Source of the DNA: Ginglymostoma cirratum
Lineage: Eukaryota
Assembly (NCBI GenBank): GCA_024137785.1
Contig: JAHRHZ010000099.1
Span: 2,154,494 to 2,218,493, forward strand
Direction: 5' to 3'
Length of the DNA: 64,000 nt
Below the pieces are notes generated by a model that did no database searches, was not told where the DNA came from, and saw only the letters and a list, made by a program, of their open reading frames with translations. Made by a program: the position numbers and the translations under genes. Positions within the stretch are counted from its first letter, which is position 1, and every line of letters starts with the position of its first letter. Positions 536 to 63,206 of this stretch are shown here, piece after piece.

Positions 536-539
536 TGCA

Positions 540-775
540 TTGAATTCAATAACCATCTGAAATGAACTGTTGGTTCAATGCTGACCATGAAACATTCGTC
601 ATAAAAAAAACCCATCTGGTTTACTGTAACATACTTTGAGGAAGGAAATATGTCATCCTTCCTGATTTGGACTACAAGTGGCTCCAGACCACAACAACGT
701 GGTTGACTTTTCACAGCCCTTTGGACAACTAAGTGTCGGTAACAAATGGCCAAATTCCTTGAACGTATAAAACAA
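540..775 (+). mobile_element. Deu-domain SINE fragment (SacSINE1-like)
   Basis: gaaggaaatatgtcatcctt...ggactacaagtggctccagaccacaacaacgtggttgact resembles the copy at 47709-48068. Confidence 0.6.
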
Positions 776-1117
776 AATCGCTGGGTTAATTCCTAGAATG
801 AATCGTTGGATCTATACTTATTCATGTTCAAAAGAACGAGAGGAGTTCTATTTTAGGTATTCGCTCATTAGCTCCATGCCTTTACCCTTGTTCTGAGATT
901 TCTTACCTCTTCATTCCTGCCTACTTGTTTATGATGATCCTACTTAAAATTGCAGACTTGACTACCTCCTTACATGACTAGCTGTTAAGTTGTGTTTGAC
1001 AGCCCTCTTTTGAGACTTCTTGTGAAGTACAATACGGCAAAGTCAGCGAGCAAATACAGCATCTCCTTGTGGTTCTATTTGCGTTAATTAAGCAACAACG
1101 ACACCTAAGGTTACCAA

Positions 1118-4639: not shown

Positions 4640-5410
4640 CCAGCGTGGAAGATGCATTTTTTAATTCATTCAGAGTACGTGTGTGTTCCTGGCTGGGACA
4701 GCATTTATTGACTATACCTCGTTGCACTTGAGAAGGTGATGGTGAACTACCTTCTTGAACACCTGCAGTCCATGTGTGGTATTCTTTCATATTGTTGTTA
4801 GTGGGGCAGTTCCATGGTTTTGACCCAGTAACAGTGAAAGAAAGGCAAAGTATTCCCAAATCAGGATAGTGAGGGGCTTGGGGGTAAACTTGCACTTGGT
4901 TGTGTTCTCATGAGTCTGCTATCCTTCTGTTTCGAGATGGAAGTGGTTATGGGGTTGGAAGGAACTGTCTAAGGAGACTTTATATCACAATTGAAACTGA
5001 ACTTCAATTGTATAGGGAATGAATATTTGAGCATGTGGTGACAGTTGAGCCGTTGCTTTTCCCTGGATGGTATCAAGCTTCTTGAGTGATGTTGGAACTG
5101 CAATTATGCAGCCAAATGAAGGGCCTTCCACCACGATCTTGACTTGCGCCTGGCAGATGATCAACTAGCGTTGAGAGTTTGGAGGTGAGTCACTAGATGC
5201 GGGATTCCTAGCATCCTTGAAGCCGCAGTGCTACTATCGTTAATCCAGTTCAATTTCTGTTCAATGGAAATCCACTGGATGTCAATAGTGAAGATTTCAG
5301 TGATGGCAATGCCACTGAATTTCAAAGGGCGACATTCGTCTTCCTTCCTTCTGGAAATTGTCATTGCCTAGAATTTGTGTGGCGTGAATGTTACGTGCGA
5401 CTTGTTAACT
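4640..5410 (-). mobile_element. LINE 3' fragment (same family as 20300-22740)
   Basis: Shared 3' tail (cagcatttattg…gagaaggtgatggtgaactaccttcttgaac) and decayed RT C-terminus. Confidence 0.65.
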
Positions 5411-14520: not shown

Positions 14521-14807
14521 TCAGCTGCAACTGGGTCTCGCAATAGCCTTTTGAAATGGGGTTGCCTGAGTTTCGTGTTTAACTCCACAGAAGTAAAGCT
14601 AATGTGAGTTCCAGTCTGAGGCTGATAGGGTTGCCCATCTCCTGCTGGATCGAACTGATCTCAATGCCATCCCCCTGACTCTGCCATCTACCGTCCACTC
14701 AATCTCCACTGAGACAAGGTTAAAACCTCTCAGCAAACACACCAGGGTGGCCGTGTCCTTTTCGTGACTTGAACCGATAAGGGCTGAAGGAGGGGAACTG
14801 TGAGACT
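14521..14807 (-). pseudogene. IGLC: Ig lambda (type II/NS3) light-chain constant exon, cluster A, pseudogene
   Basis: Acceptor ttttcatgtccacag; …DTATLVCLLRGFNLVSVEIEWTVDG…LSASDWNSH*LYFCGVKHETQATPFQKAIARPSCS*; in-frame TAG at 14599-14601; 1-nt and ~26-nt deletions relative to the C exon at 42179-42504. Confidence 0.92.
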
Positions 14808-15704
14808 CTGTGGACATGAAAAGCAGGAAATAATGCAAGACGATTGAATCCTCACTGGCATTAAACTTTTTCTTTAACTCTCTGAAAATTCAGTGTCACC
14901 CTGCAAGACTGTAGAACTTGCTTCAAACGGGACTTTTCAGTGCGCACGAAAAAGGAACTGAGATCTGCAACTCTGGAGAAGATATAAGCAGGAAGATGTT
15001 TCTGCTTTTGCTAACTCCCAGAGAACAAGTGAAAATTATGAAACACGAGGAACGATTTAAAAAAACGTGGGAACAGTAAAAAGTTCATATGTAGTGGTCT
15101 GACGCAAACTGTGACTGCCAATGTCCCAGGAATTGAGGATTAAGACCAACGTAAAATCTGACACATCAGAATTTAGGATAAAACGTAAAGCCAATGCTGA
15201 CAAACAATATTTTGCGATGTTTATCACAAGCATTCCATTCTAATGAATCCCCTCTTAATCATGATTCTTGCTTCTGCTTCTTCTGTTGATGGAAGTGGTC
15301 TCTTACAGACTACTACTTAAGAGTTCGGCATATTAATCATTCCTCGTTCCCGCCCGCCTGTTATCGAGAATGCCCTGGCAAATTGCACAGGGCGCTCCTA
15401 ACGTATTTGAGGTGTGAGAATCAAAAATATCTGTGGTGTCAGAGTGTCAAAAGACACAGTTTCGAAAAGAAAGTATTTTCCAACAAGTAACCTCTGTCAT
15501 ATTAACCGATTAAATCCACTTCGGATATTATTATTCCCGATCTAACTTTAATTTGCGAGTAATAAGTCCAAACATACACTGGTCGACTCTGTCTCTCTAA
15601 AACAAACTGCTCATTATAACAGGGATGTTTATGGATCCTTACTGTGTTCAACTGACCTGTAGCTCTTTCTCCATTTCAGCGGAGTCTGCTCTTCTGAAGT
15701 GCTT

Positions 15705-16060
15705 CTTTTTGTACTCAGTCAGGAATGTGCTGTCGCTGGCTGACCGGCAATTATTGGCCGTCCCTAACTTCCCCTGAGAAAGTGGTGGTGAGTTGTCTCT
15801 TGAACCGCTGCAGTTCTTGTGCTGTAGGTTGACACACACGGAAGGAGATTCCATGACTTTAACACTTTAACCCAATGACAGTGAAGGAAAGGCGGTATAT
15901 TTCCAAGTCAGGATGGTGAGTGACTTGGAGGGGGTCTTGCAGGTGGTGGGATTCCCTTGATGTTCTTGTCCATTTAAAAGGTATTGGTGGAGGGTTTTGA
16001 AGATAATGTCCATGGAGCGTTGGTGAATCTAGATGGTACAGACTCCTGCTGAGCCATTTA
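15705..16060 (-). mobile_element. LINE/SINE 3'-tail fragment in the J-C intron of cluster A
   Basis: Same tail sequence as 4640-4990 and 20300-20650. Confidence 0.6.
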
Positions 16061-16417
16061 TTAATATTGACAGTATTGAGTGTCCTGAGGTCGTGTTACA
16101 GACTACATCAATATCAGCCGCTACTTTATTTTTTCTCCTCATTATACAAATTTATTCTCATGATGCAGCCCGTTGTAAAAGTCACAGCAAGGATGTCGTT
16201 ATTTCCTATATTTTTAAATATACCTTAGCGCCGACTGAGGCCAGCGACAAACACGGAGTGAAATGGTTTATTTAATCTGAGGCAAAGATGAAAATACGTT
16301 TTCTAATCCTTGATCTAGAAGCTGAAACGTTACACTTTGTTCCGGCACTGAGTTTTAATGACAACCATGTCAGCGGTCCTCCCAGCACCAGAATTGCCCA
16401 TCTAAGATGAATAATCT

Positions 16418-16425
16418 ATTTGCAT
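16418..16425 (+). promoter_or_regulatory. Octamer ATTTGCAT in the J-C intron of cluster A (possible intronic enhancer element)
   Basis: Exact octamer; the aligned position in cluster B reads agccgcat. Confidence 0.3.
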
Positions 16426-17961
16426 TCTGAACGATTCACCTTGACATCTGCAACGAAGTAAAATGCAAGTTGAAAATGTGAGTAATCAGACAAGTGTCGC
16501 CAGTTTCCATCGCCACAGCACCCCTACGATTCAGTGTTTAGCTGAATTTGCTGACACTGAAATAGTTGGAGTCCTGCGGGACTATCCAACAAAATTCTAA
16601 CCCATCCGTTGACATTGTTATAATAATGCGAAGTATTTTACAGTACATTCTCTTTCTCTTCAGAACTGTATTAGAGACGCATTTAGAAAAAGAACAAGTA
16701 TGACAAAGGGAGTCTTTTTGTTTTATTTTGCCACGTTAGCCCATACCATCCTGTGCAGACAAATAATGATCATTACACACACTGTTAGAACATCGATATT
16801 TTCTGTGTGCGACTCCGCTCACTGAAACAGACTACGCATTCAGCAACACTTGAGAGAGCGCAGGTACAGGGGCAATGATTTAAAAATCTATTCCGAGACA
16901 TATCCGAGCAACTGGATGGACAGAAATAAATGTTCCATTGACTTGCTAACAAAACAATTTGGCTGTGACTGCGTTTGTGCAGAATTGGATCTGCGTGATC
17001 ATCACTGGCTGAACCCAGCGCAAAAAAAAAATGTTCACTATAGTCATCGGGGATTAATGTGAAAGGCAAGACTGAGAATCTTGGACTGAGCGGTTTTCGC
17101 TGCTTAGAGAAGAGTGAGACCGAGTTGCAGCAAAACGCCACATCGTCCTCCCGCCTTAGAACGGCGCTTATATCGCGGTGCTGCTTTCAGTGGAATGAAA
17201 ACGGCATTGCGCAAACATTTTCAAGTATGTTTTCAGCTTTTAGAGTGGGGCTATGAAGGCCACAGATGATAACATCTGAAAGACTCCATCGGGTTGAAAA
17301 GAATCATAAAATTTGCGGTCACCAAAGAAGGCCGATCGTATCCTTTCAATCACCCGACCCATTATCAGACATTCTTTCCCGCTGTTTTAAAGAAAAATGC
17401 CTGCTTCCTTTCTCAGCACTACCGTAGCTTCGTTGATCGTACTCTTAACAGCTGCGTCAATGGGGACCGAACAATCCCTGAGGTAAAACACTGCCTTCAA
17501 AACGCTGACCGCGTCAGCAATTATGTTGGTTTTCATCTCCCTGCGCGGGAGCGGCTTGGAGATCCGAACATTTTCAGCGCAGTATGATATAAAATTCGAG
17601 TAGAGCTGGATTCATTTAGGTTTTCCTCACAAGGGAAACCTCGCAGCTCTGATATCACCTTAATACATTGTCTATATGTCCTCTACAGGGCTCGGACATG
17701 CTCCGTAACATGGACTGTCATCTAAACATCACCGATTCACAAGGTCTGAATGAATGCAACTGATGGAAATTCTCCTGATCTACTCTGAATCAATTTGTTA
17801 AGTGTCTGTAAATTGTTTCTGACCTGCGTCGCTGCACTGAGGAAATACAACGATTTGAATGAGAAAAATGACGGCTTTATCACGGAGAATGACTCGGTAC
17901 TAGTGATTTTGGATTCAATGATTTTCGACCAAACACAGATAATCACAGATCGAACATCTTT

Positions 17962-18180
17962 TAACCAGGTGTAGAGCTGGATGAACACAGCAGACCAAAC
18001 AGCATCGGAGGAGCAGGAAAGCTGACTTTTCGGTTCTGACCCCATCAGCAATTATGTTGGTTTTCCTGGCCCGAAACGTCAGCTTTCCCGCTCCTCCGAT
18101 GCTGCTTGGCCTGCTGTGTTCATCCAGCTCGACACCTTGTTATCTCAAATTCTTCTGCATCTGCAGTTCCTACTATCTCT
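17962..18180. mobile_element. Fold-back element (same family as 1118-1676) just downstream of J in cluster A
   Basis: Inverted arms agctggatgaacacagcag…gcatcggaggagcaggaaagctgac / gtcagctttcccgctcctccgatgc…ctgctgtgttcatccagct; decayed TSD tcgaacatcttttaa / tcgagcatttgttaa. Confidence 0.75.
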
Positions 18181-18234
18181 CGAGCATTTGTTAATCCCGA
18201 ATTCCAATTTTCGGATGATCAATAATTTACTTAC

Positions 18235-18562
18235 TGAAAGTCCAACTTGGTTCCTCTCCCGAAAGTGTAATCCACATATCAGTAATAATCGGCGTCTTAC
18301 TCTGATTGCATATTGGTAATGGTGAAGTACATCCTATTACTTGACGAGTCCACGCGCCCACTGAATAGATTTGAAGTACCCGGTTGAATTCCGGAGTACT
18401 CACTCCAAACCAACACTGGGGCATTCCCGGCTTTCTGCCAGTACCAGCTGGTTTATTAATAGCCGATGTTGCCCCCGGACATGGTGCAGGTGATCTTCAC
18501 TGTTTCCGCCGGGAATGTTGAGGTGAATCCTGGCTGAGGCAGGACACGGTCCCCGTTTGAAC
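18235..18562 (-). pseudogene. IGLV: Germline-joined Ig lambda VJ exon, cluster A, pseudogene
   Basis: Acceptor atttcaccag; DRVLPQPGFTSTFPAETVKITCTMSGGNIGY**TSWYWQKAGNAPVLVW…QSE*DADYY*YVDYTFGRGTKLDF, then gtaagt donor; four stops including at the second Cys; no RSS between V and J. Confidence 0.93.
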
Positions 18563-18688
18563 CTGGTGAAATAATTGCACTTTGCAATTGCGAAAGTTAT
18601 TCATAATTCAAGGCATTAAACTCTGAAACATTATAAAATACAGATCAATGTAAAAATGCAGTAATAGAGGCTGGCATCTCTATTTTTT

Positions 18689-18731: not shown

Positions 18732-20299
18732 GTGAAAGTTCTAGTGCTTGATATAATAATGTATATCCGGGGTCTTTCCAAACCTCCCATTAAGTGCCTG
18801 CAAACCTGGCAAAGTCACTGAATGTTAATAATTTACGTACATCTATAATCACGTGATATCAGACAAAAGGGACCGCAGGAATAAATGGTATCTGCGCACT
18901 GTTCATTCCAACTATTCTGGCAAAATACGACGAAAGAAGTGTTTAAAACATAGATGGCACAACCAGGAATATTGAATGCGGAGAAATATAAAGTGCGGTG
19001 CAACAAGAAATACCAGTTAGATAAAACTATGGTAGGGTTTTTAGATGCCCGAAGTTAGCAATAAATTATAAAGCTAAAGGCGATAACCAGTAAAATAGTT
19101 ACGGGGCCCTCGCGAAGAACAAGTTGGATAAGTAGAAAATGAGTTGCGAATTTATTTCTAGATGCGCAAAAGAGTGAGGAAGGTTGAGTCCTATAGGTCA
19201 TGGTTTGAGAGGATGAATGGACAGACAGTTGCATAGATGAAGGAGGCTTCATAAATATTCCCAATTTTGCAATTTGCCATTTAGTTTGTATTTATCCGAA
19301 ATGGTTTAGCTCTAATTCTCAGATTGTGCCATCTTATTTTATAATTTGCTCAGTCTGTTCAACACAATTCTCTGCACCTTAGAACTTGGTGATTTCTGTT
19401 GACTTCCATACAGAATGGTACGTGCAAATCATTTAAACTGAGACCCCAACACCGACTCCAGGAGAACAGCAGTTGACACACCTTGGCAATCAAAAACAAA
19501 ATCCTTTATCTGTACTCTTAGTCTCTTATTTTATCACGAATAGTCAACCCTTATGTCAACCGTAATTTTATGCGGGTGTACATTACAACAATATTGTCTA
19601 GCGCATTGTACACAAACTTAATGCTATTTTTCTGCCTTTGCATTTTATTCGTTTAGAAGATAACCTGTGCGTGCCATTTTACAGTTTTGTGACAATTTAG
19701 AGCAATTAATACAAGAGTGATTACAAATCATCCCGAAAGAAGTCTCCAGAAGGTGCATTTTCAATGTGCCGCTTGTACCTGACGTGGTCGCAACCCAAGG
19801 ACTTAGCGTATCTAATAGTTGTGATCATTGAGTTAATGCTAACAACGCCTTCTTCTTTGTAAAACACAACGGGCTAAGACATGATTAAAAGAAAACCCTG
19901 CATTGTCTGGAACTGGACGGTTGGAGGGCAGACGTAAATAAAGCGAATACAATCGCAGAGATCACCCTGAATATGCGCAAACGAATAATTTACGGGAACA
20001 CACAACACGTGGGTCAAGTGCGTTCATTCTGTAGCAGTAATAGAACTCATTTGCAGTAAAACAAGAGACTGCACAATAGCAGTGTGAGAAAATTAAGGCA
20101 TTTGTTGACGTATCTGTTTATCTTGTTTCGCAATTTGATTCACAGTAAGTCACTGCTTTGCAATCAGCCCTCTTGTACGCTAATCTAAATCATGTTAAAT
20201 AATTTACACCACAGAAAGGGAAAGATCAATTCTGATTCGTTTCTTACATGTTGGCAAAAGGACTGAAACAGTAGAATTCTTTTTTGCTGTTTTTAACAA

Positions 20300-22740
20300 A
20301 AAAAATTGTGGAATGTGGGCATTGCTGGCTGGCCAACATTTATTGTCCGCCATTCAGGAGGTAGTGGTGAGCTGCCTTCTCGAACCACTGCAGTCCACCT
20401 GCTGTGGGATGGCCCACAATGCCATTAGGGAGAGAATTCCAGGATTTTGAACCAGCAACAGTAAAGGAATGGCGATATACTTCCAAGTGGGGATGGTGAG
20501 TGGCTTGGAGGCAAAGTTGAAAGTGGCGGTGGTCCCAAATATCTGCTGCCCTCGTCCTTCTAGATGGAGGTGTTCATAGGTTTGGAAGGTACTGTCTGAT
20601 GATCTTTGGTGAATTTCTGCAGTGCATCTTGTAGATTGTATACACTGCTGCTACTGAAGCGTCGGTGGTGGAGGGAGTGGATGCTTATGGATGTAGCACC
20701 AATAAAGCAGGGTGCTTTGTCGTGGATGGTGTCAAGCTTCTTGAGTGTTGTTGGGGCTGCACTCATCCAGGCAAGTGAGGAACATTCCGTCACACTCCTG
20801 ACTTGGGCTTTGTAGACGGTGGACAGTCTTTGAGGAGTCAGGAGGTGAGTTACTCGCCGCAGTATTCCTAGTCTCTAACCTGGTCTTGTAGCCACTGTCT
20901 TTATGTAGTGAGCCCAGTTGAGTTTCTGGTCTATGATAGCCCCCAGGATATTTATAACGGGGGTCTAAGTGATGGTAACACCATTTAATGCTAAGGAGCA
21001 GTGGTTAGATTATCTCTCATTGGTGATGGACTTGGCCTGGCATTTGTGTGGTGCGAATGTTACATGCCACTTGTCAGCCCAAGCCTTGATATTGTCCAGG
21101 TCATGTTGCATTTGAACATGGACTGCTTCGGTATCAGAGGAGTGATGTTGGACATTGTGCAATCATCAGTGAACATCTCCACTTCTGACGTTATGGTAGA
21201 GGGAAGATAATTGATGAAGCAGCTGAAGGCGGTTGGGCCTAGGACATTGTATCAGAGATAAAAGGTACTGCAGATGCCGGAGAATCCGAGATAACAAGCA
21301 TGGGGCTGGATGAACACAGCAGGTCAAGCAGAAATGAAGGGTTTAGGCCCAAAACGTCAAGTTTTCCTGCTCCTATGATGCTGCTTGACCTGCTGTGTTC
21401 ATCCAGCCCCATGCTTGTTATCTGGGCCTAGGACATTACCCTGAGGAACACTTAGAGATGTCCTGGAGCTGAGATGATTGATGTCCACCAACCACAACTA
21501 TTTTCCTCTTTGTCAAGTATGACTCCAACCACCAAAGAGTTTGTTCCCTGATACCCATTGATTCAAGTTTTGCCAAGGCTTCCTGATGCTGCACGCAGTC
21601 GATTGCATCCTTCATGTCAATAGCTGTCACTCTCACCTCACCTGTAGAAGTCAGATCTTTTACGCATGTTTAGACCAAGGGTGTAATGACGTCAGGAGGT
21701 GAATGGCCCTGGCAGAACCCAAACAGTGAATCACTGTTATTGTTGAGCAGGTGCTACTTGAAAACAGTGTTGTTGACACTTTCCATCACTTTACTGATGT
21801 TTGAGAGTAGACTGTTGGAGTGGTAATTAGCTGGATTGGATTTGTCTTGCTTTTTATGTACAGGGCATCCCTGGGCAATTTTACACATTGTCGGGTGGAT
21901 ACCAGTGCGGTAACTGTACTGGAACAGCTTGGCCAGGGGAGTGGCAAGTTCTGGAGCACAAGTCTTCAGTACTATTACCGGAATGTTGTCAGGGCTTGTA
22001 GCCTTTTCAGAGTTCATTGTCTCCAACTGTTTCTTGGTATCACTTGGAGTGAATTGAATTGGCTGATGACGGATATCTGTAATGCTGGGGACCTCTGGAT
22101 GAGGCCCAGATGGATCATCAACTCAGCACTTCTGGCTGAACATTGCTGTAAAAGCGTCCGCCTTATCTTTTGCACTGATGTGCCGGGCTCTTCCATCATT
22201 GAGAACAGGCATATTTGCGGAGCCTCTTCCTCCAGTGAGTTGTTTAATTGCCCACGATCACTCACGATTGGATGTGGCAGGACTGCAAAACTGAGATCAG
22301 ATCCATTGGTTGTGGATGATTATCCGTTTGTTAGCTCTGCCTGTCACTTGCTGTTTATGCTGTTTGGCGTGCAAGTAGTCCTGTGTGGTGGCTTCACCAG
22401 TTGACACCTCATCTTCAGGTATGCCTTGTGCTGCTCCTGGCATGCCCTCCTGCACTCTCCATTGAACCAGGGTTGAGGGATATGCCGGGTGATGAGGTTA
22501 CAGATTGTGCTGGAGTGCAATTCTGCTGCTGTTGATCACACACAGCGCCTCATGGATGCCCAGGCTTGAGTTGATAGGTCTGTTGGAAGTCTATCCCATT
22601 TAGTACGGTGATAGTGCCGTACAACACATCCTCAATGTGAAGGCAGGACTTCGTCTCCACGACGACTGCGCGGTGGTCACTCTTACGGATACTGTCATGG
22701 ACAGATGCCTCTGCAGCTGGCAGATTGGTGAGAATGAGGT
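20300..22740 (-). mobile_element. LINE (CR1/L2-like clade, second family), RT plus 3' tail, frameshifted
   Basis: ORFs 21754-22026 (KATSPDNIP…LAKLFQYS…PVHKKQDKSNPANY), 21436-21636 and 20560-20793. Confidence 0.85.
21249..21422. mobile_element. Fold-back element inserted in the LINE
   Basis: Exact 15-bp TSD tgggcctaggacatt at 21234-21248 and 21423-21437; long inverted arms; centre atgaagggtttaggcccaaaacgtc. Confidence 0.85.
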
Positions 22741-23489
22741 CAAGTAGGTCAGGATGAGGTCAAGTAATGGCTTGATTTTATCGCACAGGGCAAGTATTTG
22801 AGTTATACGTGCTTATTTTAGTTTAGTTTATTTACAGATTATTTTAGTCAGTGTCACATTACGCCAGAATTTTTGAGACACACTGTTGTTGAGCTAAGGC
22901 TGCTCGACAGCGCCACCACCTGTCAGAAGAATAGTCTCTTTCATTTGCAATCAAAGTAAAATGAGGAACATGAAAATTACTATGAACAGGAATGGTCCCC
23001 TTAAATCCTCAGGCTTGGTCAGCTATTGAATAAGCTCATCGATATTCCTTACCGCAGTTCCAATTTTGCATTTTACCCCAACTCCCATAAATAATTCAAT
23101 ATGCAAAACTATCCTGCTTCCAACATGTTCAATTACTAATTGTTCATCTAAAGCTGGCATGGCAGAAACCAGATATCCACAATACATTTCATAAAGAAAC
23201 CAATTTCTTTCCTTTGTCTCATTCTTAAATGGCTTATTCTGGTATTATGCCTGCTCCTTCTCAACTAAGCTGTCTGGGAAACAACACGCTATCTAGTATG
23301 TTTCAATGAAACTACTTCTCAGTCTTCTACAAGCTAGGGAACACATACCTAATCTGCCCAGTAGGATAATCTTCACAAGTCGAGCACAAGTATTTTAAAA
23401 CTTCCTTTTTTTCCACTGCAAAGTCATCTTTCAGTCAGTGTTGAGATCAAGTTCTCCAAGTGTGTCTCAACGCAGGGAGATTATTATGT

Positions 23490-24400
23490 CACCATACTGT
23501 GTTACCAGTGGAAGGAAAGGAAGTGAGACCGCTGTAAAACCTAACCTGTACGTTAGCAGTTTACTTTGGAAGAGTGGAAGTGGTAGAGTTGGCGGGTTTG
23601 GAAAGTGGTCTTTAAGGAGCCCTGCTATTTTTTTTTTTGCAGTGCTTCTTCTAGATGGTGGGGATTGCTGCTGCTGAGAGTCGATGGTGAAGAGAGTGAA
23701 TGCTGAATAAGTTAGATGGGTTGCTATTCAAGTGGACTGTTTTGTTCTGGGTGGTATCAAGCTCCCTGCGTATTGTTGGTGACGCAGTCATGCAGCAAGT
23801 GGGGAGTAGTCTATCATACTCCTGCCTTATGCCTAGCAGCGGTAGATGAGCACTGTGAAGTCAAGGTACTCACTGCAAAATTTATATATTTTGTCCTCAT
23901 AGAACATCCAGCTGCCAACATGTTTCAATTGCCACAGTAGTTATACTGTTAGACCAGTACTCTCTCTGATCAATGATAGCCCCAGGTTATTAATATCAGG
24001 AGATGAAGCAATGGAAATATCATTGAATGTCAAGGAGTAATGTTTGGTTTCTTTCTTGATGGAGATAGGCATTGACTGTTAAACATGTCATACAAATGTC
24101 ACTTGCTGTTAATCAAATCAAATTGGAATGTTATCTGGATCTTACTGTATATGTGTGTAGTCTGTTTCAATATCGAATGGAATGGTGCCGCTCATTGTGT
24201 GATCATCATAGGATATCACAGTTTGAGAGTTTATGATGGAGGGTAGATCATTTATCAAGTAGCTGAAAATTAGTAGACCTAGGACACAATCCTGAGGTAC
24301 TCCTGCAGTGATGTCCTATGGCTGAGATGGCTGACCTCCAACAACTGCAACTATCTTCCTTTATGCCAGGAATGATTCCAACCAGTGGAGATGTTTCCTG
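23490..24400 (-). mobile_element. Older copy of the second LINE family
   Basis: Colinear decayed similarity to 20450-21560. Confidence 0.6.
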
Positions 24401-25504
24401 TGAAGGCAGGAATAAAATAAAAGACAAAAACTAGTATTATGGAGAGTGAGGATGAAAAGAGTAAAGAAGAATAGCCGTAGTGTGGAAAATTATTAATAGA
24501 CACTGCATGCCATATACGACATATATCTAAGACGCTATACCAACTCTTAGTTCCTTGACTTCCTTTCTGTCCTGCCAACCCATTTACACTTACTTATGGT
24601 CCCCATTATCAGATTGCCTTTCTCCTTGGCATATGAATATCCACCCCTTTATCTGCCTAGCTGTCTTTCTCTTTCTTTGGGCACCATCTCCTCTCATCCC
24701 GTTACTACCACCACACTCCCCTCCCGCACCCCTAACCAGTCCCAACCATCAGTTCCACACCTGCCTTCAAGCTTGTATACATTGTAGTATTTAGCAACCA
24801 CATTATTCTATTCCTTCTGATTAAACAGAATTATTCTAATAGTGCTGACTATAAATGTAACAATTTCAAAGCAGGATTTTTACGGTTTCTTCTGTTTTTA
24901 AACAACCTTTCGCGCCGATCACGGACAACTGCAAACACTGAGTGAAACGGTGTACATAATCCGAAGATTAAAACAGTCCTTTTTCTAATTGGTGATCTAG
25001 AAACTGAACCGCTACAATTGATTATGACACTAAGTTCCAAAGTCAGCCACAACAGCGCATGTAACCAGCAGCAGAGTTGCCAGTCTCAGATAAACAATCT
25101 AGCCGCATTCTGAGAAATCCTGGCTGTGACTACGTTAACGCAGAAATTGGATTAGCTTTGATCGAACTGGTTGAGCCCAGCGCAAAAAAAAGTGCTCCTG
25201 CTGGCCCTCGGGATTAATGTGAAAGGTAGGACTGAGAATCTTGGACTGAGCGATTTTCATTGCTTAGAGACGCAGTCTCACACTTGGAACGGCGCTTATA
25301 TCGCGGCGCTGTTTTCTCTAGAATGAAAAAGGTATCGTGCGAAAATTGTAATTAGTGTTTTGAATGTTTGAAACGGGGCTTTGAGGGTCGGGATACAATT
25401 CCCAGGCGAGACTCGGAGCTGGTGTTTTGGGATTCGGTGGTTTTCCACGAAAATGTTAAACTCAAAGCGAAACTTGGTGCTCAGGTGACCAAAAATTTAC
25501 TTAC

Positions 25505-25846
25505 TGCCCAGGTTCAGTTTGGTTCCTTTCCCGAATGTCACTATTCCGCTACTTGCTGCAGCGCAGTAGTAATCGGCGGCATCCTCCGACAGTACGTTGG
25601 TGATGGTTAAATGCATCTTGTTACTCGATGAGTCCACAGACCCTGTAAATCGATTTGGAATTTCCGAAGCAGTTTCGTCTTCCTCGTCCCAAACCAACAC
25701 CGGGGCACTGCCGGGTTTCTGCCAGTACCAACTCGCGTAGTAGCTGCCGATGCTACCTCCGGACATGGTACAGGTAATCCTCACAGTTTTCCCCGGGGAT
25801 GTTGAGATGGATCCTGGTTGACTCAGAGAAGGATCCCCGTATGCAC
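25505..25846 (-). CDS. IGLV: Germline-joined Ig lambda (type II/NS3) VJ exon, cluster B, intact
   Basis: Acceptor cttcaccag; (S)AYG-DPSLSQPGSISTSPGKTVRITCTMSGGSIGSYYASWYWQKPGSAPVLVWDEEDETASEIPNRFTGSVDSSSNKMHLTITNVLSEDAADYYCAAASSGIVTFGKGTKLNLG; both Cys, Trp and FGxG intact; phase-1 gtaagt donor; 342 nt in frame. Confidence 0.96.
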
Positions 25847-25995
25847 CTGGTGAAGTGACAACTCAAAGGTCAATCACACGTTGCAATTACGAATATTGTC
25901 TTAGTTTAGCTAATGGCAGTTAAACGCAAGAGTGACAACACGAACAAGGAGCAACATTAAAAGCAGCTACAGGGTATATTAACATGTCTACTTAC

Positions 25996-26044
25996 TGTGG
26001 AGACAGAGCATCAGTGCGGCGAGAACTCCAACCCGTTCATTCAT
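25996..26044 (-). CDS. IGLV: Leader (signal peptide) exon of cluster B
   Basis: cacc-ATG; MNERVGVLAALMLCLH + A|gtaagt; 49 nt, phase matches the VJ exon. Confidence 0.93.
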
Positions 26045-26148
26045 GGTGAAGGTTCTAGTGCCTGGCACAATAACGTGTTTCTGGGATCTTTCCAAACCTC
26101 CTATTAAGTATCTGCAAACCTGGCGATGTCACTGAATTTTAATGATTC

Positions 26149-26211
26149 ATGCAAATCTATAACCACGTGATATCGGCCAACAGCAACCCCAGGCTCAAAT
26201 TGGATTTGCAT
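26149..26211 (-). promoter_or_regulatory. Ig V promoter of cluster B: two inverted octamers with an E-box between them
   Basis: atgcaaat 26149-26156 (ATTTGCAT on the coding strand), cacgtg 26164-26169, atttgcat 26204-26211; 105-165 bp upstream of the ATG. Confidence 0.8.
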
Positions 26212-27209
26212 AAGCGCATTGCAAATATTTTTTTTGTAAAAGAGAAACGTTATGTCAAAGCCACCGACTATTACACCAGGATGATTGAATCCAACGAAAC
26301 AAAAGATGCGGCACAACCAGGAATAGAGATTAGATGGAAAATGTTTGTATTTCAGAAGCCCAAAAAATATAAGGGAGAGCGAAAACAGAGGGTGGTAATC
26401 GACAAATTACCAATGAGGTCCTTGCTAAGAATAACTTACTGAAGTGGGATTTATTTGTTCATATGGAGGAAGGCGAAGTTAGTTCAGGACTGATCATCCT
26501 AAAGGATGGATGGGTGGAAGTCATTCACTTACATTTACATTCATTTCTTCATAATTTCTATCAAAATTACTTCTCACCTCACCTTGTAAAAATTCATTTG
26601 TCTCGGGCAAACCTCGTTTGTCTATGTCCTGTTGAACTATCTGATCATTCGCCTCAAGGTTTGCTACAATTCCGAGTTACTGTCTTCTCTAACTCGTAAA
26701 AAAAATGCCTGCATATCCAAAATGACAGGAGAGCAATTGCCTCATCAGTGATTTTTGGAGTTAGAGAAGTACATACTAACCCAAGTCTGGGAACCACTGC
26801 TGACCAATCTCCTCTGTCATTTAGCTAAATATTTAATAGTGGCGATGTAATAGAATTGACTTCATCTTAGCTAACATGTTTATTATGTGGTACTGTATCA
26901 AATGGTGCGTTTATAACTCCAGTTACAAAGCATCGAATATTCACTGGTCAGAAACTTTCTTTAGTGTTTCACAAAATCGACCTTATTAAACACCATTTCC
27001 TTTTAATACGTCCTGGCTGGATTTCACTTATAAATCCTGATTTCGCCACGTGGCTGCTAATGTTATGCCAAGTCGCTGTCTCCAAACGTTTTCCAACTGC
27101 TAACGTTTGGCTGTTTGGCCTGTAGGTGGCCGGTGTGCTGTTCCTACTGAACAGGAATAAAATGTTTGCATTTCTGCAGTTCTCCGCTTGTACTTTTACA
27201 TCTAATTTA

Positions 27210-29430
27210 CTCCTGGGCGGTGGGGCATCACTGAATAGGCCAACCTATATCACATCCCCAATTTCTCTTGACAAGATGATGGTCAGACATCTCCTTGATA
27301 CAAGGCTCTTTATGTGTTGTGGGGTGCGGACAACGGGCCTGGGGATGTAGGTATACTCACGGCACTATTTGGAAGGGAGTTCAGCATTTTGATACAGCGA
27401 CAGATACTTCCAAGTCCAAATGGCCTGTGACTTAGAGAAAACCTTGCAGGTGGTGGTATTCCCAAATATATGATGGCCTTAACCTTGCAGGTGATCGAGG
27501 TGCCAGTTTTCAAGGTGCTGAGGAAGGGGCCTTGTTGGGTTACTGCAGTGCATTTTGTAGGTGGTGGCCCGGTCAACTGTGGTGATGGGAGTGTACGTTG
27601 GAGATACCGAATGTAGTGCCAATCAAGCAGGCTGCTTTTCCTGGATGGTATGGAGCTTCTTGCTCTCCACGCTAGTGCAGAGCATTCCACAACATGCCTG
27701 CTTCATACTTTGTAGACGGTTGACAGATTTTGGGAGTTAGGAGGTGAGCTATTTTCTGCAAAGATCCGAACTTCTGAATTATTCCTGTAGCCGCAGTTTG
27801 TCCAGTTCAGTTTCTGGGAACACAAGTATATTGATTAAGCAGGAAATGTCATTTCCTGGCACTTCTGCGCTGTGGATATTATTTACCGCTTATACTTGGC
27901 TCGTTGTTGTTTGTGTCTTACTACATATGGACAGCTAACACTTCATATTCGAGAAGCCATGAGTCAGTTGCTGAACATTGTGAAATTATTACTGAACATC
28001 CACACTTTCGACTTCATGATGGAAAAAGTGTGGTCATTAACGAAGAAATTGCATGTGTTTGGGCCTACAACACTACTCTGAGGAACTCCTGCAGAAATGT
28101 CTGGAATTGAGACAATTTACCGCCAAACAACGCAGCCGTCTTTCCTTGTTCTAGATATGACCTAAAATGGCTGAGAGTTTTCTGCATAATTCTAGACTTG
28201 TTGGGTCTACTCGATGCCGTACTGGGTCAAATGTTGCCAGAGATATCAGACATACTTTCACTTTCCCTCTTGCGTTCAGATCTGTTGGCCATGTTTATGA
28301 CTCAGCTCCAATAAGTAAGGATCTAAGTGGCACTGACGAACTGAAACCGATCTTTTTAAAAATCTATTCTAACTAATCACCCCATAGATGTTACTAACCA
28401 TCACTGGAGCAAATGGAACTTGAACCTAGGCCTCCTGGCTCAAAGGTAAAGCTACTACTAACGTGCCTCATGAACTGAAATCAAACGACTGTATGTAGCT
28501 TAATTCTAATCAGGTGTCATTTGATAATACCGTAGACTACTCATTCCATCACTTTTCTGATGACTAAGAGTAGATTGTTTGGGTGGTAATGGGTGGGTTG
28601 GATTCATCCTTTTGTATTTCTGTAGACCAAGCGATTTTCCACATTGTTGGGCAAATGCCAGATCTGCAAATGTTCTGGAATTGCTTGAGTCTGGGTGCAT
28701 CTAGGCCTAGCATACAAGTCTCCTATACTATTGCAGAAAGGCTATCAGGGCCAATAGTCTTTTCAGTATCCTGTGCCATCAATCGTTTCTTAATATCAAG
28801 TGGGGTGAATTGAAGTCGCTGAAGACTGCAATCTGTGATGCTGGAGACCTTTGGAGGGGGCCGAGATGGAATATCAACGTGGCACTTCTGGCTGAAGATT
28901 GTCGCAAGTATCTCAGCCTTGTCTTTTGCACTAATGCACTAGTTTCCCCTATCAATAATGCTGGGAATATTTGAACAGTTGTTTAAGTTGTTTAACAGTC
29001 CACCACCATTCACGATTGATTGTGGCAGGACTGCAGAACTTGGATCTGATCTATTGTGTGCGTGATTCCTTAGTTATGTCCATTGCACGCTCTTTCTGCT
29101 GGTGGATATGCAAATAATTCTGTGTTCTAACTTCGCCAGGCTGTATGCCTGTTGTTGATCTTGTCATCTTCTTGCACTTTCTGCATTGAACCGAAATTGA
29201 TGGTAGTGGTTGAATTAGGGATATGCTGTACCAAAAAGTTAAAGATTATGGTTGAATACAATTTTGCTGCTGACGAAAAAACATAACGTCTCATGACTGC
29301 ATAGCCTTGAGTTGCCGGAAGGATTTAAAAGCCACCCCACTTAGCACGGTGAGAGTGCCACATAACACAGAGGAGGTGTCCTCAGTGCAGAGACAGACAT
29401 TTGTTTCCAGTATCACTGTGCAGTTGTAAA
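27210..29430 (-). mobile_element. Old, fragmented copy of the second LINE family
   Basis: Colinear decayed similarity to 20300-22740. Confidence 0.6.
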
Positions 29431-42178: not shown

Positions 42179-42504
42179 TCAAATACAGCTAGATGTCGCG
42201 ATACTTTTCTTTCGAAGTGGGGTTGTTAGAGCCTCGTGTTTAATCCCACAAGAGTAAAGCTCGTGTAAGTTCCACACTGAGACTGACAGGGTCAGTTAAC
42301 TGCTCACACTGAACGTGTTGTCCTTCTCCTGGTGGATCCGACTGGTCTCCACACCGTCCACCCTCACACTGCCATTTACCGACCACTGAATCTCCACAGC
42401 GCCGGGGTTACAACCGCTCACCAAACACACCAGGGTCACCGTGTTCGTTTCCGCGATTTGAGCATCTGAAGGCGGAAGGAGTGAAACTGAAGGGGCCCGT
42501 GGAT
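42179..42504 (-). pseudogene. IGLC: Ig lambda constant exon, cluster C, one premature stop
   Basis: Acceptor aattatcag; PRAPSVSLLPPSDAQIAETNTVTLVCLVSGCNPGAVEIQWSVNGSVRVDGVETSRIHQEKDNTFSVSS*LTLSVSVWNLHELYSCGIKHEALTTPLRKKSIATSSCI*; TAA at 42296-42298. Confidence 0.95.
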
Positions 42505-44924
42505 CTGATAATTGGAAATAAGTCGAAGAAGATCGAATTATTAATTAGCATGTAAATCGTAATCAACGTTTCACATTTTTCAAATATTTGAAAATTACAC
42601 ATCACTCTTCAAAGCGGAGTCTCATTGTGAGAACAATGCAACACTTGCAGCTGCCAGTGCTAAAAACCATGTGACCTGAGAGGATATTGCCACTTTGGAG
42701 ATGGCAAGGCGCGCATGCATATTCTGAAGAAGGAATTGAATTAAATCGAAATACAAGGTCTGAAATTCCCTGAGTTTTTAGGAGAAAAGATCTCAATCAA
42801 TACATTTGACTTAGAAATAAACTAGTGATGAGAGAAAAAAAGATATAATATTTAAGGCACAATATTTAAGGCCTTGTTAAAGACGAAACAAAAGCTTCCA
42901 CGTTTTTCCCGTTCGTATCGCGCATTTCCTTAAAAATAGGATGTAGATAGTCAGCAGATAGTAAAGCGCGCTCAGATGTCCTCAGATCGTGGTCGGCTGT
43001 ATATCAATGCAAATCCGTTCCCATATTTCCAATCTTAAAAAGAAAGGTACCCATGATAAATCAGCATGAAGTAGGGCAGTGGAATAGGATGCGTTGAGAT
43101 TGAACTGTCAGAGTCTCCGGCCACTGCCTCAAGCTTTACGGCCTTCGTTTGACAAAGTGAATCATTCGCTACATTTGATTCTTTCATATTAGGCAGTGAA
43201 GAAAATATGAAACTGTCATAAATCTTTTCAAGTCTACGATTAGACAGTGGTGTCACTATAAAATTGTTTGTGACCTTGCTGCGCGCTGCTAGGTCTTCCG
43301 GAGCGCCTCCTTAAGTAGTCCCTAATCTTTTGAACAAATCAATGCAGTTCTAAGGAATTCCCTTGGAAACCGACAACTTCTTTTTTGTGATTTTAAATTT
43401 AGACAGCGACTCGCTGTGCAGTCTGACAAGATATCGCAAACGGGTAATAGCATAGCGTTATAATCTCCTTCCAACGGCTGAAGACGTTGTACATTGTGAC
43501 AGTGGAATTTCTGAAACATTCTGGGATAATGGAACAGGTTTTGCCTTCTTTTATATCATTGTCCAAATAAAAGTTACTTTCAGCGAACTAATTGAGAGTG
43601 GAGCTTGGAAAATTTGGCGTTTGTATTATTAGAGAAACTGATGCAGATACGATAGAATATTTTCTGTTTCTTATCTTCAGTTGGTGCATAATGACAATGA
43701 AAAGACAAGTCGAAGTGACAATAGCGAATGCTTATACTCGCTAATGTTACTGCTCTTAACGCTGATCGCAGAAACAGCGTAAAAGTACAACTGAGGGAAT
43801 ATAAAATATGTGCCAGACGCTTTTGTGACTCAGTGGTATAGTCGCTCCATCTTGGCCTGGAGACGCGGGTTCATGTGCACCTGCACACCGTTGGTGAGTC
43901 CAAACAGATTGATGTAAAGAATCATTGATTGCGCGGATCTCACAGCACCATTCAGCGAATGGGTAGATTCATTAATAAAACACTTCATGTCCATCAGTGA
44001 TGTTTGTCCGCTCGGCTGGCTATCATTTTCACGAACTATTTTCTGACATTTTTGATGTTAGTCTGCTGTGATCATTGCGAAATGTGAGACTTAGGTACTT
44101 TCATTGCGTTTGGAGGCGAAGGTGAAGTCCATCAGTTTGCCCCATTGTCCATCGTTATTCAAGATTGGGGATCTAAGCTCCATTGATCGAAGTGGAATGA
44201 AGCATTTAAAAGTATGTTTCAACTATTTGAACAGGGTTATCGGAGGCTGGGGTACGTCAGTCTGAAAAGCCAGATACCAAAGAATTTTAGTACACAGAAG
44301 AAGGAGCCTTTTCCCCTCATTTCTCTTTTAAACACTTCCTTGGTTCTGCTCTGTCCATTCTTAGAGATAAGTCACTGCAGTACGAACCCTCCCTGGGTAA
44401 ATATACATTCCATCCTGCCCTTTCATACTTCTCCCAATGAAATTAAGTTTATCTCCTCGGGCCAGCGGCTGCCTGATCTCTGATAATGGCCGCATTCTAT
44501 AAGAATATGGGATGTGACGGCAACCTTGGCTTTCTCCTAAAGTGCTTTAGGTATTTTTAATCAAATTATTTCTGGATCTTCAAACGGATCTCTGGAGCGA
44601 GGGGGACTTCAGCGCGGAGCCTTCTAGCCGAGCATTAGGGACAGCACTACTGCCCCATAAGAGCCTCGCTTAACCCATCTAAAGCCAGGTAATACTGGTA
44701 TCATCTGGGAAACGATTAGACCTACTTCCTGCTTACAGCCCAGATTTTCCACTTCAAAATTAGCCGCATTTCATCCCTTCCATATCACATGGTGCCGATG
44801 TACCAGCTCACTGTAAATATACATCAGAACAATAGACCAGATGTGATCTCGTTTAGTCTACAAAGTAAATGATTTAAAACTAACTTTGAGACTTCCGCTG
44901 TTATGGTGTATGTCACATATTTAC

Positions 44925-45265
44925 TGCCCTGTTTAATTTGGTTCCTTTCCAGAAGGTGAATTCACCAACATCTGCCAGAGCGCAGTAATAATCGGCGGCG
45001 TTCTCTGATTGAATATTGATGATAGCTAAATGCAACTTGTTACTGGACGAGTCCACGGACCCGGTAAATCGATCTGGAATTCCCGAAGCCGTACTTGTGC
45101 TTTCGTGCCACACAAAGACCGGGGCACTGCCGGGTTTCTGCCAACACCAGATCGCGTCGTAGTTGCCAATTTTGACTCCGGATATGATACAGGTGATGTT
45201 CACAACATTTCCCGGGGATATTGAGGTGGATCCTGGCTGAGGCAAAGCAGGATCCCAGTTTGCAT
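44925..45265 (-). pseudogene. IGLV: Germline-joined Ig lambda VJ exon, cluster C; frame open but splice-defective
   Basis: ORF 44913-45245 QPGSTSISPG…ITCIISG…WCWQKPGSAP…DYYCALADVGEFTFWKGTKLN; acceptor AG changed to AA (ttcaccaa); FGxG reads FWKG; 1-nt deletion before the gtaaat donor shifts the phase. Confidence 0.92.
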
Positions 45266-45423
45266 TTGGTGAAATAGTGAAGATATCGACAAGTCACATT
45301 CACAATTTTGAATACTGCTTGTTGTCTACGTCCACCACCCCGTCCCCCCAACCTCCACCTTAACCAATATACAATGGGAACCATGTAACAACAGCGAAAG
45401 TGCAAGTGAACGCCTATACTCAC

Positions 45424-45469
45424 TGCGGAGACATAACAGAGAGGTGAGTGCTCGAACCCATTCAGTCAT
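45424..45469 (-). pseudogene. Leader exon of cluster C
   Basis: cacc-ATG; MTEWVRALTSLLCLR + A|gtgagt. Confidence 0.88.
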
Positions 45470-45585
45470 GGTGAAGACTTGTGAAAATCAGATAAACAAT
45501 AATTCCTGACACAACGTGTTTTGGACTCTTTTCAATGTCTTCTTAAGAAATATCAGCCCTGACAACCAGTGAGTATTAAAAATGC

Positions 45586-45652
45586 ATGCAAATGTATATT
45601 CACATAAAGTGAATAATTGGATTCTGCAAATTGTGTCGATTTTAATTTGCAT
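45586..45652 (-). promoter_or_regulatory. Ig V promoter of cluster C: two inverted octamers
   Basis: atgcaaat 45586-45593 and atttgcat 45645-45652, same arrangement as cluster B. Confidence 0.78.
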
Positions 45653-62914: not shown

Positions 62915-63206
62915 GGAGCAGATGAGCTCAAAGACAGCGTGAGGGGAGATAAAAGAAACTTGTGTCACAGCAGTAAAGCTCGCCTGATGTCCACTGCGTG
63001 TCTGACAGATTCAGAAACTGCTCACACTGAAGATGTTGGCAGTCTCTTTTTGAATCCGACTGGTGACAGTGTCATTTCCTGCAGTATCCTAAACTGTAGT
63101 CAGTTCAATCTGCAGAGCGCCCCAGATGAAACCAATTCACCAAAACTGACCAGAATCACCGTAATTTAGTTGGAAGAAGACAGAAAGACAGGTGGAACTG
63201 GTGAAT
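62915..63206 (-). pseudogene. IGLC: Heavily degraded Ig lambda constant exon (cluster D; any VJ would lie beyond the window)
   Basis: Acceptor cgctttcag|AT; frame fragments SPVPPVFL, TSRIQKETANIFSVSS, LNLSDTQWTSGELYCC; nucleotide match to 42179-42504 (actgctcacactgaa, atccgactggt, gtaaagctcg); several stops and frameshifts. Confidence 0.8.

What the first reader, a model, noticed from the sequence alone, without database searches (positions are those of the whole stretch)
25497..26211. Intact, promoter-equipped germline-joined lambda VJ with no constant exon of its own: candidate V-only or truncated (surrogate-like) light chain
Seen in sequence: the leader, VJ exon, splice sites and both octamers are intact, while every other Ig exon in the window is damaged. 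The other clusters have C 2.4-3.4 kb below J. Here the J-C intron homology with cluster A stops near 24790 and I find no C exon between 24.8k and 18.9k. The only downstream C is the cluster A pseudo-exon 10.7 kb away. The phase-1 donor would join it in frame (A|AG TCT = K-SHSSPPS…TATLVC…EWTVDG…DWNSH*), giving V plus ~69 aa of C with no second or interchain Cys; the stop is in the last exon, so NMD would not be expected. Reading through the donor gives L-VJ-SK*, a free V domain. Established knowledge: cartilaginous-fish lambda/type II genes are germline-joined VJ-C clusters. Inference: retention of this VJ could reflect a fixed-specificity V-only/VpreB-like product or cross-cluster splicing. 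Recent loss of C is the simpler explanation.
Basis: partly seen in the sequence, partly recalled or inferred. Interest (0 to 1): 0.75.

Follow-up and report, generated by a model that had tools for sequence, protein, structure and literature searches.

The report
Orphaned shark lambda VJ gene
A shark antibody light-chain gene piece (leader plus pre-joined V-J exon with its promoter) is fully intact but has lost the constant exon it needs, so it is most likely a recently stranded gene remnant, not a new kind of V-only light chain.

Summary
On the minus strand there are two octamers (26211-26204, 26156-26149), a leader exon (26044-25996) and a germline-joined lambda VJ exon (25846-25505). All are open and have canonical splice sites. 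The VJ breaks 0 of 42 columns that are invariant in 16 functional lambda chains. No constant exon lies between it and the next cluster's promoter. This was tested by tblastn with sandbar-shark lambda chains and by a profile of 110 lambda C domains against all 2906 six-frame pieces. The neighbouring clusters are pseudogenes.

The V-only or surrogate-like reading is not supported:
- The domain keeps its J strand and has no unique tail.
- No AATAAA or ATTAAA follows within 2 kb.
- Splicing to the cluster A pseudo-C would give mostly out-of-frame junk.
- The only RNA-like run shows relatives joined to a normal C, and none of its contigs carries this gene's diagnostic bases.
- Its closest relatives, two bamboo-shark genes at 86-87% identity, have their own C.

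Best reading: the C was lost by deletion or rearrangement fairly recently, leaving a stranded VJ in a decaying tandem lambda array. Expression and assembly correctness remain untested.

The parts
26204..26211 (-). Distal octamer ATGCAAAT of the promoter
   Evidence: Exact motif.
26149..26156 (-). Proximal octamer ATTTGCAT, about 105 bp upstream of the ATG, followed by TTAAAA at 26142-26137
   Evidence: Exact motif.
25996..26044 (-). Leader exon: MNERVGVLAALMLCLH plus 1 base, phase 1, donor ACA|GTAAGT
   Evidence: Sequence. tblastn match to the sandbar-shark leader.
25847..25995 (-). Leader intron, GT...CACCAG
   Evidence: Sequence. Contigs of run X1 skip or replace this interval, seen as a loose end at 25843 and a joint 25826-25989.
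25505..25846 (-). Germline-joined lambda V-J exon, intact, with Cys, WYWQKPG, DYYC and FGKGTKLNLG. Phase-1 donor GGCA|GTAAGT.
   Evidence: It breaks 0 of 42 invariant columns and 1 of 62 columns conserved at 90% or more.
25497..25504 (-). Read-through of the donor: with base 25505 it reads S-K-stop
   Evidence: ORF 25497..25784.
24793..25496 (-). Retained proximal part of the J-C intron, colinear with the cluster A intron 16116-18210
   Evidence: blastn blocks at 68-78% identity. Positive-control z = 74.
23595..24400 (.). Partial copy of an interspersed repeat of the same family as 20579-21550. It may be an old resident of the J-C intron, because cluster A keeps an adjoining part of the same family at 15722-16028.
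   Evidence: The link to the ancestral intron is inference.
22750..23594 (.). Unique 845-bp piece at the junction, of unknown origin. The constant exon and its flanks should lie in or near here but do not.
   Evidence: No match in the window. No similarity to the A intron, the A 3' flank or the B intron (z 0.2, -0.5, 1.0). No read depth in three runs over 22901-23500.
18896..22677 (-). Upstream region of cluster A, colinear with the focal gene's own upstream region 26210-29427. It holds old repeat copies and a fold-back insertion at 21286-21426.
   Evidence: Colinear blocks at 60-67% identity. Inverted repeat.
18237..18596 (-). Cluster A VJ pseudo-exon, with 4 stops and a 4-codon gap
14524..14816 (-). 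Cluster A C pseudo-exon, the only C downstream of the focal donor, 10.7 kb away. Its acceptor CACAG|AG is intact, but its start and middle are read in other frames and a stop precedes the second Cys.
44931..45254 (-). Cluster B VJ exon. It is open, but FW replaces FG, WCW replaces WYW, and the acceptor AG is changed to AA.
42182..42523 (-). Cluster B C exon with one stop
62967..63133 (-). Badly degraded C fragment of a further cluster

Best explanation
This is the stranded front half of a germline-joined lambda (type II / NS3-type) light-chain cluster. It lies in a tandem, same-strand array of lambda clusters that is decaying. The ancestral cluster had its own C exon 2.4-3.4 kb below J. A deletion or rearrangement removed the distal J-C intron, the C exon and the 3' flank. 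That brought the next cluster's upstream region to within about 2.8 kb of the J donor and shortened the VJ-to-VJ spacing to 7.3 kb, against 19.5 kb for the neighbouring pair. The loss is recent on the slow clock of this gene family, so the promoter, leader, VJ reading frame and splice sites have not yet decayed. The gene cannot make a light chain. Any transcript would either read through to L-VJ-SK-stop or splice to the dead cluster A C exon.

Shown: the anatomy, the absence of C, the conservation of the VJ, the pseudogene state of the neighbours, and that the nearest relatives have a C.
Inferred: that a deletion happened, when it happened, and that the product has no function.
For: Anatomy:
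- Intact exons and promoter motifs.
- No C in 18.9-25.5 kb by tblastn or by a 110-sequence C profile against 2906 pieces. All 7 profile hits below E 0.05 fall in the three known C places.
- The focal intron is colinear with the A intron only down to 24793.
- 18896-22677 is colinear with the focal gene's own upstream region. So the region below the focal J quickly becomes the next cluster's upstream region.

An ancestral C is implied:
- The closest proteins are bamboo-shark chiPu_0007091 (87.4% over 111 aa) and chiPu_0007090 (86.5%), both with a normal C.
- They form a clade with the focal VJ and cluster B, support 96/90.

The loss is recent:
- The focal VJ breaks 0/42 invariant and 1/62 columns conserved at 90% or more. 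Cluster B breaks 6/41 and 12/61; cluster A breaks 9/42 and 17/62.
- Terminal branch lengths are 0.14 for the focal VJ, 0.72 for B and 0.80 for A.

No sign of a dedicated C-less product:
- No AATAAA or ATTAAA from 25505 to 23500.
- The tail is only SK-stop.
- The A pseudo-C is frameshifted.
- X1 contigs at 90% likeness or more cover only the exons. All 26 contigs at 25755 read another base, and all 8 contigs that run past 25506 carry a different last J base and continue into a normal C start, EPRRPTVS.
Against: - The VJ shows no measurable relaxation. Its neighbours are long dead and the paralogues are very old (dS 0.59-0.74). A 'recent' loss is therefore required, not demonstrated.
- The deletion cannot be dated, and its breakpoints are not clean. 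An 845-bp unique piece of unknown origin sits at the junction.
- No reads of this individual were available, so assembly error or a haplotype-specific deletion is not excluded.
- The RNA run may be from another species (share of words 0.04). Absence of focal transcripts there is weak evidence.
- Orthology to the bamboo-shark genes rests on 113 protein columns.
Confidence: 0.68

Rival explanations
1. Assembly error or haplotype-specific deletion. The real locus, or the other haplotype, still has a normal C exon below this VJ, and the gene is an ordinary working lambda cluster.
For: - The VJ, leader, splice sites and promoter are indistinguishable from those of a working gene.
- The region below J is rich in repeats that occur several times in the window, the kind of place where assemblies collapse.
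- VJ-to-VJ spacing is 7.3 kb here against 19.5 kb next door.
- In X1, transcripts of close relatives are joined to a normal C.
Against: - There is no N run or other visible break between 1634 and 64000.
- 22750-23594 is unique sequence, not a collapsed repeat.
- All 26 X1 contigs at 25755 and all 8 at the J-C joint differ from this gene, so no transcript of this VJ with a C was seen.
- In three protein searches no full-length chain was more than 87.4% identical to this VJ.
Confidence: 0.13
2. The focal VJ never had its own C. A partial tandem duplication copied upstream region, promoter, leader, VJ and proximal intron, making a VJ-VJ-C mini-array in which the focal VJ had to splice across cluster A's VJ to cluster A's C.
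For: - Homology with cluster A covers exactly such a unit: upstream 26210-29427 with 18896-22677, and promoter to intron 26364-24793 with 19053-16116.
- The homology then stops on both sides.
Against: - The focal VJ groups with the bamboo-shark genes and cluster B, not with A (support 96/90). A's long branch makes its placement unsure.
- dS between focal and A (0.74) is larger than between focal and B (0.59).
- Both bamboo-shark relatives have their own C.
- The A C exon looks as decayed as the A VJ. That would leave the long conservation of the focal VJ unexplained.
Confidence: 0.09
3. The VJ is kept by selection and works without its own C. It could be a secreted or chaperone-like V-only lambda domain, a truncated chain using the cluster A pseudo-exon, or a VJ spliced over a long distance to a working C of another cluster.
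For: - The VJ is fully conserved (0/42 invariant columns broken) and the promoter is intact, amid dead neighbours.
- The donor is phase 1 and in frame with the A pseudo-exon, whose acceptor and pyrimidine tract are intact.
- Other lambda-like genes are noted on the same chromosome piece (unchecked notes).
Against: - No transcript with this gene's own bases was seen.
- There is no poly(A) signal within 2 kb.
- The A pseudo-exon gives about 17 out-of-frame residues, about 30 genuine ones, an out-of-frame middle and a stop before the second Cys. That is not a foldable C domain.
- There is no unique tail.
- One private non-conservative change, Gly to Glu at residue 61 in the SGIP turn, stands against Gly in at least 80% of 16 homologues.
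- Surrogate light chains are reported as absent from fish (passages of PMC5192425 and PMC9614664).
Confidence: 0.07

Closest known systems
Germline-joined lambda (type II / NS3) light-chain clusters of cartilaginous fish
   Same: - Leader, single fused V-J exon without RSS, octamer promoter and phase-1 donor.
- 79% identical to sandbar-shark lambda and 86-87% to bamboo-shark lambda V regions.
- Two reviews state that all lambda genes studied are germline-joined (passages of PMC5192425 and PMC4279169).
   Different: The cluster lacks its C exon, so it cannot encode a light chain.
Ig pseudogene clusters and orphaned V genes (partial clusters, orphons)
   Same: A V-region gene piece separated from a usable C, lying among decayed paralogues (clusters A, B and the 63-kb fragment).
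   Different: It shows no disabling mutation of its own and is as conserved as working genes. I found no description of a C-less germline-joined lambda VJ in sharks in two full-text searches. Those searches cover only the held library.
VpreB, the surrogate light-chain V component of mammals
   Same: A lambda-like V domain with a leader, encoded without a C domain.
   Different: - VpreB lacks the J-encoded G strand, which lambda5 supplies, and carries a charged C-terminal unique region (passages of PMC9614664).
- This gene has a full J (FGKGTKLNLG) and only two extra residues before the stop.
- The surrogate genes are reported there as a eutherian invention.
Sandbar-shark AAA86751.1, a 161-aa 'lambda light chain' (P0001)
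   Same: A database lambda entry whose V-J is followed by a short non-Ig tail.
   Different: Its tail is a C exon read in another frame. It matches the shifted frame of the C exons of clusters A and B. That gene therefore has a C exon, and the focal gene has none.

Membership tests
Functional germline-joined lambda light-chain cluster | Leader exon with ATG and a phase-1 donor | tested here: met
   26044-25996, ACA|GTAAGT.
Functional germline-joined lambda light-chain cluster | Single V-J exon without RSS, with the two Cys, the Trp, DxxxYYC and the FGXG J motif | tested here: met
   (0 of 42 invariant columns broken).
Functional germline-joined lambda light-chain cluster | Octamer-containing promoter | tested here: met
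   Exact octamers at 26211-26204 and 26156-26149. Activity was not tested.
Functional germline-joined lambda light-chain cluster | Own C exon a few kb below J, with two domain Cys and the C-terminal interchain Cys | tested here: not met
   No C in 18.9-25.5 kb.
Functional germline-joined lambda light-chain cluster | Spliced L-VJ-C transcript in lymphoid tissue | tested here: inconclusive
   One RNA-like run of uncertain species shows only relatives' transcripts.
VpreB-like surrogate light-chain V component | V domain lacking the J-encoded G strand | tested here: not met
   A full J, FGKGTKLNLG, is present. Definition taken from PMC9614664 passages.
VpreB-like surrogate light-chain V component | C-terminal unique, charged tail | tested here: not met
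   Read-through adds only S-K before the stop.
VpreB-like surrogate light-chain V component | Expression in B-cell precursors and pairing with heavy chain | not testable with these tools
   No suitable RNA or protein data.
Ig pseudogene / orphaned V gene | Cannot encode a complete chain at its locus | tested here: met
   C exon absent. The only reachable C is a frameshifted pseudo-exon.
Ig pseudogene / orphaned V gene | Relaxed constraint (disabling or radical changes) | tested here: not met
   No stop, frameshift or splice loss. 1 of 62 highly conserved columns is changed, within the range of working genes (0-4).

The most novel reading that the evidence does not exclude
The VJ is maintained by selection as a C-less gene. 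Its product would be a secreted or ER-resident V-only lambda domain, or a VJ that is spliced across clusters to a distant working C. Either would be the first V-only or surrogate-type light-chain component, or the first cross-cluster Ig splicing, seen in a cartilaginous fish.
Probability: 0.06. Interest if true: 0.8.

Novelty: new member of a known kind. Interest (0 to 1): 0.3.

Why it matters
If the ordinary reading holds, the locus is a clear snapshot of how shark minicluster Ig genes die. A tandem lambda array shows three stages of decay side by side: a stranded intact VJ, a lightly damaged cluster, and heavily damaged ones. Annotators should also know that an intact, promoter-bearing VJ need not be a light-chain gene.

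It would matter much more if the VJ were expressed. Sharks have no known surrogate light chain, and how they test heavy chains is an open question. A conserved C-less lambda V product would be a concrete candidate. One RNA mapping with gene-specific positions would settle this.

Tried and rejected
- C exon hidden by divergence: rejected. tblastn with three sandbar-shark proteins at E up to 10 and a profile of 110 lambda C domains against 2906 six-frame pieces found C only at 42.2-42.5 kb, 14.5-14.8 kb and 62.9-63.1 kb.
- Junction piece 22750-23594 as a diverged remnant of the C-proximal intron or 3' flank: rejected. Local alignment scores equal those of shuffles (z 0.2, -0.5, 1.0, against 74 for a positive control).
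- Naming the interspersed repeat: failed. Pfam gave nothing significant for 4 repeat ORFs in all. My impression that it is LINE-like is recall only.
- Finding an annotated or transcript-derived full-length chain with this V: failed. Three word searches gave nothing above 87.4% identity. The 113-aa query could only see proteins of 62-198 aa.
No codon-level branch test was therefore possible.
- dN/dS among the three in-window paralogues (0.37-0.42): uninformative about the recent past.
- Literature: I saw passages only of PMC5192425, PMC2193156, PMC2435157, PMC12227049, PMC9614664 and PMC4279169. Everything else was search listings. None describes a C-less lambda VJ. I opened no supplements. Table S1 of PMC12227049, which lists Ig gene coordinates in shark scaffolds, might bear on the locus.
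- The search of protein representatives, structure prediction and fold search were not used. The protein is not open to question.
- The spliced model (leader + VJ, or VJ + any C) was never joined, typed or searched. Only the VJ exon was sent to searches, and the leader was seen only as a tblastn hit.

Full report
**What is there**

The finding lies on the minus strand. Reading it gives:
- ATGCAAAT at 26211-26204, ATTTGCAT at 26156-26149 and TTAAAA at 26142-26137.
- An ATG at 26044 and a 49-base leader exon (MNERVGVLAALMLCLH plus one base) ending at 25996 with ACA|GTAAGT.
- A 149-base intron ending CACCAG.
- A 342-base exon, 25846-25505, ending GGCA|GTAAGT.

The exon translation of 113 aa has no stop. 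It matches Pfam V-set (E 9.4e-17) and carries the framework Cys, WYWQKPG, DYYC and a fused J (FGKGTKLNLG) without any RSS. Reading through the donor gives S-K-stop at 25497.

**What kind of V it is**

A word search with the VJ exon alone found 8 proteins at E 1e-5 or better among 13 candidates. The best was sandbar-shark lambda at 79% identity. Two further searches used full-length shark chains as queries and gave 173 hits (120 listed) and 83 hits.

Against all 132 proteins stored at that point, the focal VJ is closest to two adjacent bamboo-shark genes:
- chiPu_0007091, 87.4% over 111 aa.
- chiPu_0007090, 86.5%.

Both have a normal lambda C, beginning EPRRPTVS and EPRKPTVS. The tree places the focal VJ with the bamboo-shark genes and cluster B, with support 96/90. 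That fits an orectolobiform shark.

Two reviews state that all lambda (type II, NS3) genes of cartilaginous fish studied are germline-joined. The first adds that the nurse shark has only about six such loci (passages of PMC5192425, and PMC4279169).

**No constant exon**

Two independent tests were run.
- tblastn of three sandbar-shark proteins at E up to 10 found VJ exons at 45254-44931, 25853-25503 and 18596-18237. It found C exons only at 42523-42182, 14814-14527 and 63133-62967. No hit below E 1 lies in 18.9-25.5 kb.
- A profile built from the C domains of 110 lambda chains, run with filters off against all 2906 six-frame pieces of the window, gave 7 hits below E 0.05. All are in those three places. 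The best hit in the focal interval has E 2.9 and is on the wrong strand.

The only N run is at 1234-1633.

**The neighbours**

All clusters point the same way.
- Cluster A has a VJ with four stops. Its C exon has an intact acceptor (CACAG|AG), but its first ~17 codons and its middle are read in other frames, and a stop precedes the second Cys.
It would contain only about 30 residues of genuine C sequence.
- Cluster B is lightly damaged. It keeps both octamers, a leader (MTEWVRALTSLLCLRS) and an open VJ. Its V acceptor is AA instead of AG, FW replaces FG, and the C exon has one stop. The statement that every other Ig exon is damaged needs that nuance.

**Structure below J**

- The focal intron is colinear with the cluster A intron in four blocks down to 24793, at 68-78% identity.
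- 18896-22677 is colinear with the focal gene's own upstream region 26210-29427, at 60-67%. It is therefore cluster A's upstream region.
- Between these lie 392 unmatched bases, a partial copy of an interspersed repeat (23595-24400) and an 845-bp unique piece (22750-23594).
- The unique piece shows no similarity to A's C-proximal intron, A's 3' flank or B's intron.
- VJ-to-VJ spacing is 7.3 kb here and 19.5 kb between B and the focal gene.

A loss of roughly 12 kb that took the distal intron, the C exon and the flank fits these facts. The event itself is inferred.

**Is the VJ decaying?**

Against 16 functional-looking homologues from shark, ray and chimaera:

| Copy | Invariant columns broken | Columns conserved at 90%+ broken | Columns conserved at 80%+ broken |
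|---|---|---|---|
| Focal VJ | 0 of 42 | 1 of 62 (T8S) | 5 of 79 (T1A, T8S, K22R, G61E, D64N) |
| Working genes | 0 | 0-4 | 1-11 |
| Cluster B | 6 of 41 | 12 of 61 | 16 of 77 |
| Cluster A | 9 of 42 | 17 of 62 | 24 of 77 |

- The working genes helped define the consensus, so the comparison flatters them slightly.
- Terminal branches are 0.14 (focal), 0.056 and 0 (bamboo shark), 0.72 (B) and 0.80 (A).
- If B's branch is taken as a lower bound on the neutral rate, the focal gene can have been unconstrained for at most about one eighth of the time since its split from the bamboo-shark genes. This is a crude inference from 113 columns and unresolved orthology.
- The three in-window paralogues are very old (dS 0.59-0.74, dN/dS 0.37-0.42).

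The VJ was therefore under selection until recently, or still is. Sequence alone cannot tell which.

**Expression**

The single run search found no run on record as RNA:
- X1, organism A, holds 0.04 of the sampled words.
- X2 and X3, organism B, hold next to none.

All three are contigs, and the RNA label is a guess. Laid on 20301-26300 at 90% likeness or more:
- X1 covers only 25501-26100, which is the exons, at very high depth. It has nothing in 24701-25500 or 26101-26300.
- X2 and X3 cover only the repeats.
- All 26 X1 contigs at 25755 read G where the window has A.
- All 8 contigs that run past 25506 have a different last J base, then 25 letters that I translate by hand as EPRRPTVS. That is the start of a normal lambda C, as in chiPu_0007091.

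These are spliced transcripts of close relatives (paralogues, or another species), not of this gene. They show what a working member does. They give no evidence that the focal gene is expressed, and contigs cannot prove absence.

**Against a dedicated C-less product**

- There is no AATAAA or ATTAAA on the minus strand from 25505 to 23500.
- The tail is two residues long.
- VpreB is defined by the lack of the J-encoded strand and by a charged unique tail. Surrogate genes are described as a eutherian invention and as absent from fish (passages of PMC9614664, and PMC5192425). Both sequence features fail here.

**Verdict**

The best explanation (confidence 0.68) is a recently stranded VJ of a lambda cluster that lost its C, lying in a decaying tandem array.

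The rivals are:
- Assembly error or a haplotype-specific deletion (0.13).
- A primary VJ-only duplication (0.09).
- A functional C-less or cross-cluster product (0.07).

It is a new example of a known kind, a partial or orphaned Ig gene. Its intactness is notable, and the question can be settled cheaply with gene-specific RNA mapping and long reads.

Noticed in passing
window 14524-14816 and 42182-42523; protein P0001: The 161-aa sandbar-shark 'lambda light chain' AAA86751.1 ends in a tail that matches the C exons of clusters A and B read in a shifted frame. That database entry is therefore a C exon translated out of frame, not a truncated chain.
   Followed up: partly
window 44931-45652: Cluster B is a nearly intact pseudogene. 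It keeps both octamers (45652, 45593), a leader (MTEWVRALTSLLCLRS) and an open VJ. Its V acceptor is AG>AA, FW replaces FG, and there is one stop in C.
   Followed up: partly
window 14.5-63.1 kb: At least four lambda clusters or cluster remnants lie in tandem on one strand, only 7-20 kb apart. A review gives 120 to over 200 kb between nurse-shark IgM clusters and 82 to over 200 kb between IgW clusters (PMC5192425 passage).
   Followed up: no
window 21286-21426 and 17976-18180: A fold-back element with 46-nt arms that are 98% complementary is inserted into a repeat copy. Related copies sit in the cluster A J-C intron. The sequence has very high depth in all three runs.
   Followed up: partly
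window 20306-22737, 23595-24400, 27367-29427, 49938-53350, 4728-5405: An interspersed repeat family has at least five copies in the window, in both orientations. Pfam gave no significant hit for 4 of its ORFs (1, 3).
   Followed up: partly
protein P0059 (bamboo shark chiPu_0007091): The gene model runs from the middle of its C domain into a further V region. The bamboo shark therefore also has tandem lambda clusters, and the model is chimeric.
   Followed up: no
window 451-792, minus strand: There is a marginal match to the lambda C profile (E 0.92, score 6.9) on the far side of the N run at 1234-1633. It is probably noise.
   Followed up: no
window 62967-63133: A badly degraded C-exon fragment of a further cluster. 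Its VJ would lie beyond the window's end.
   Followed up: partly
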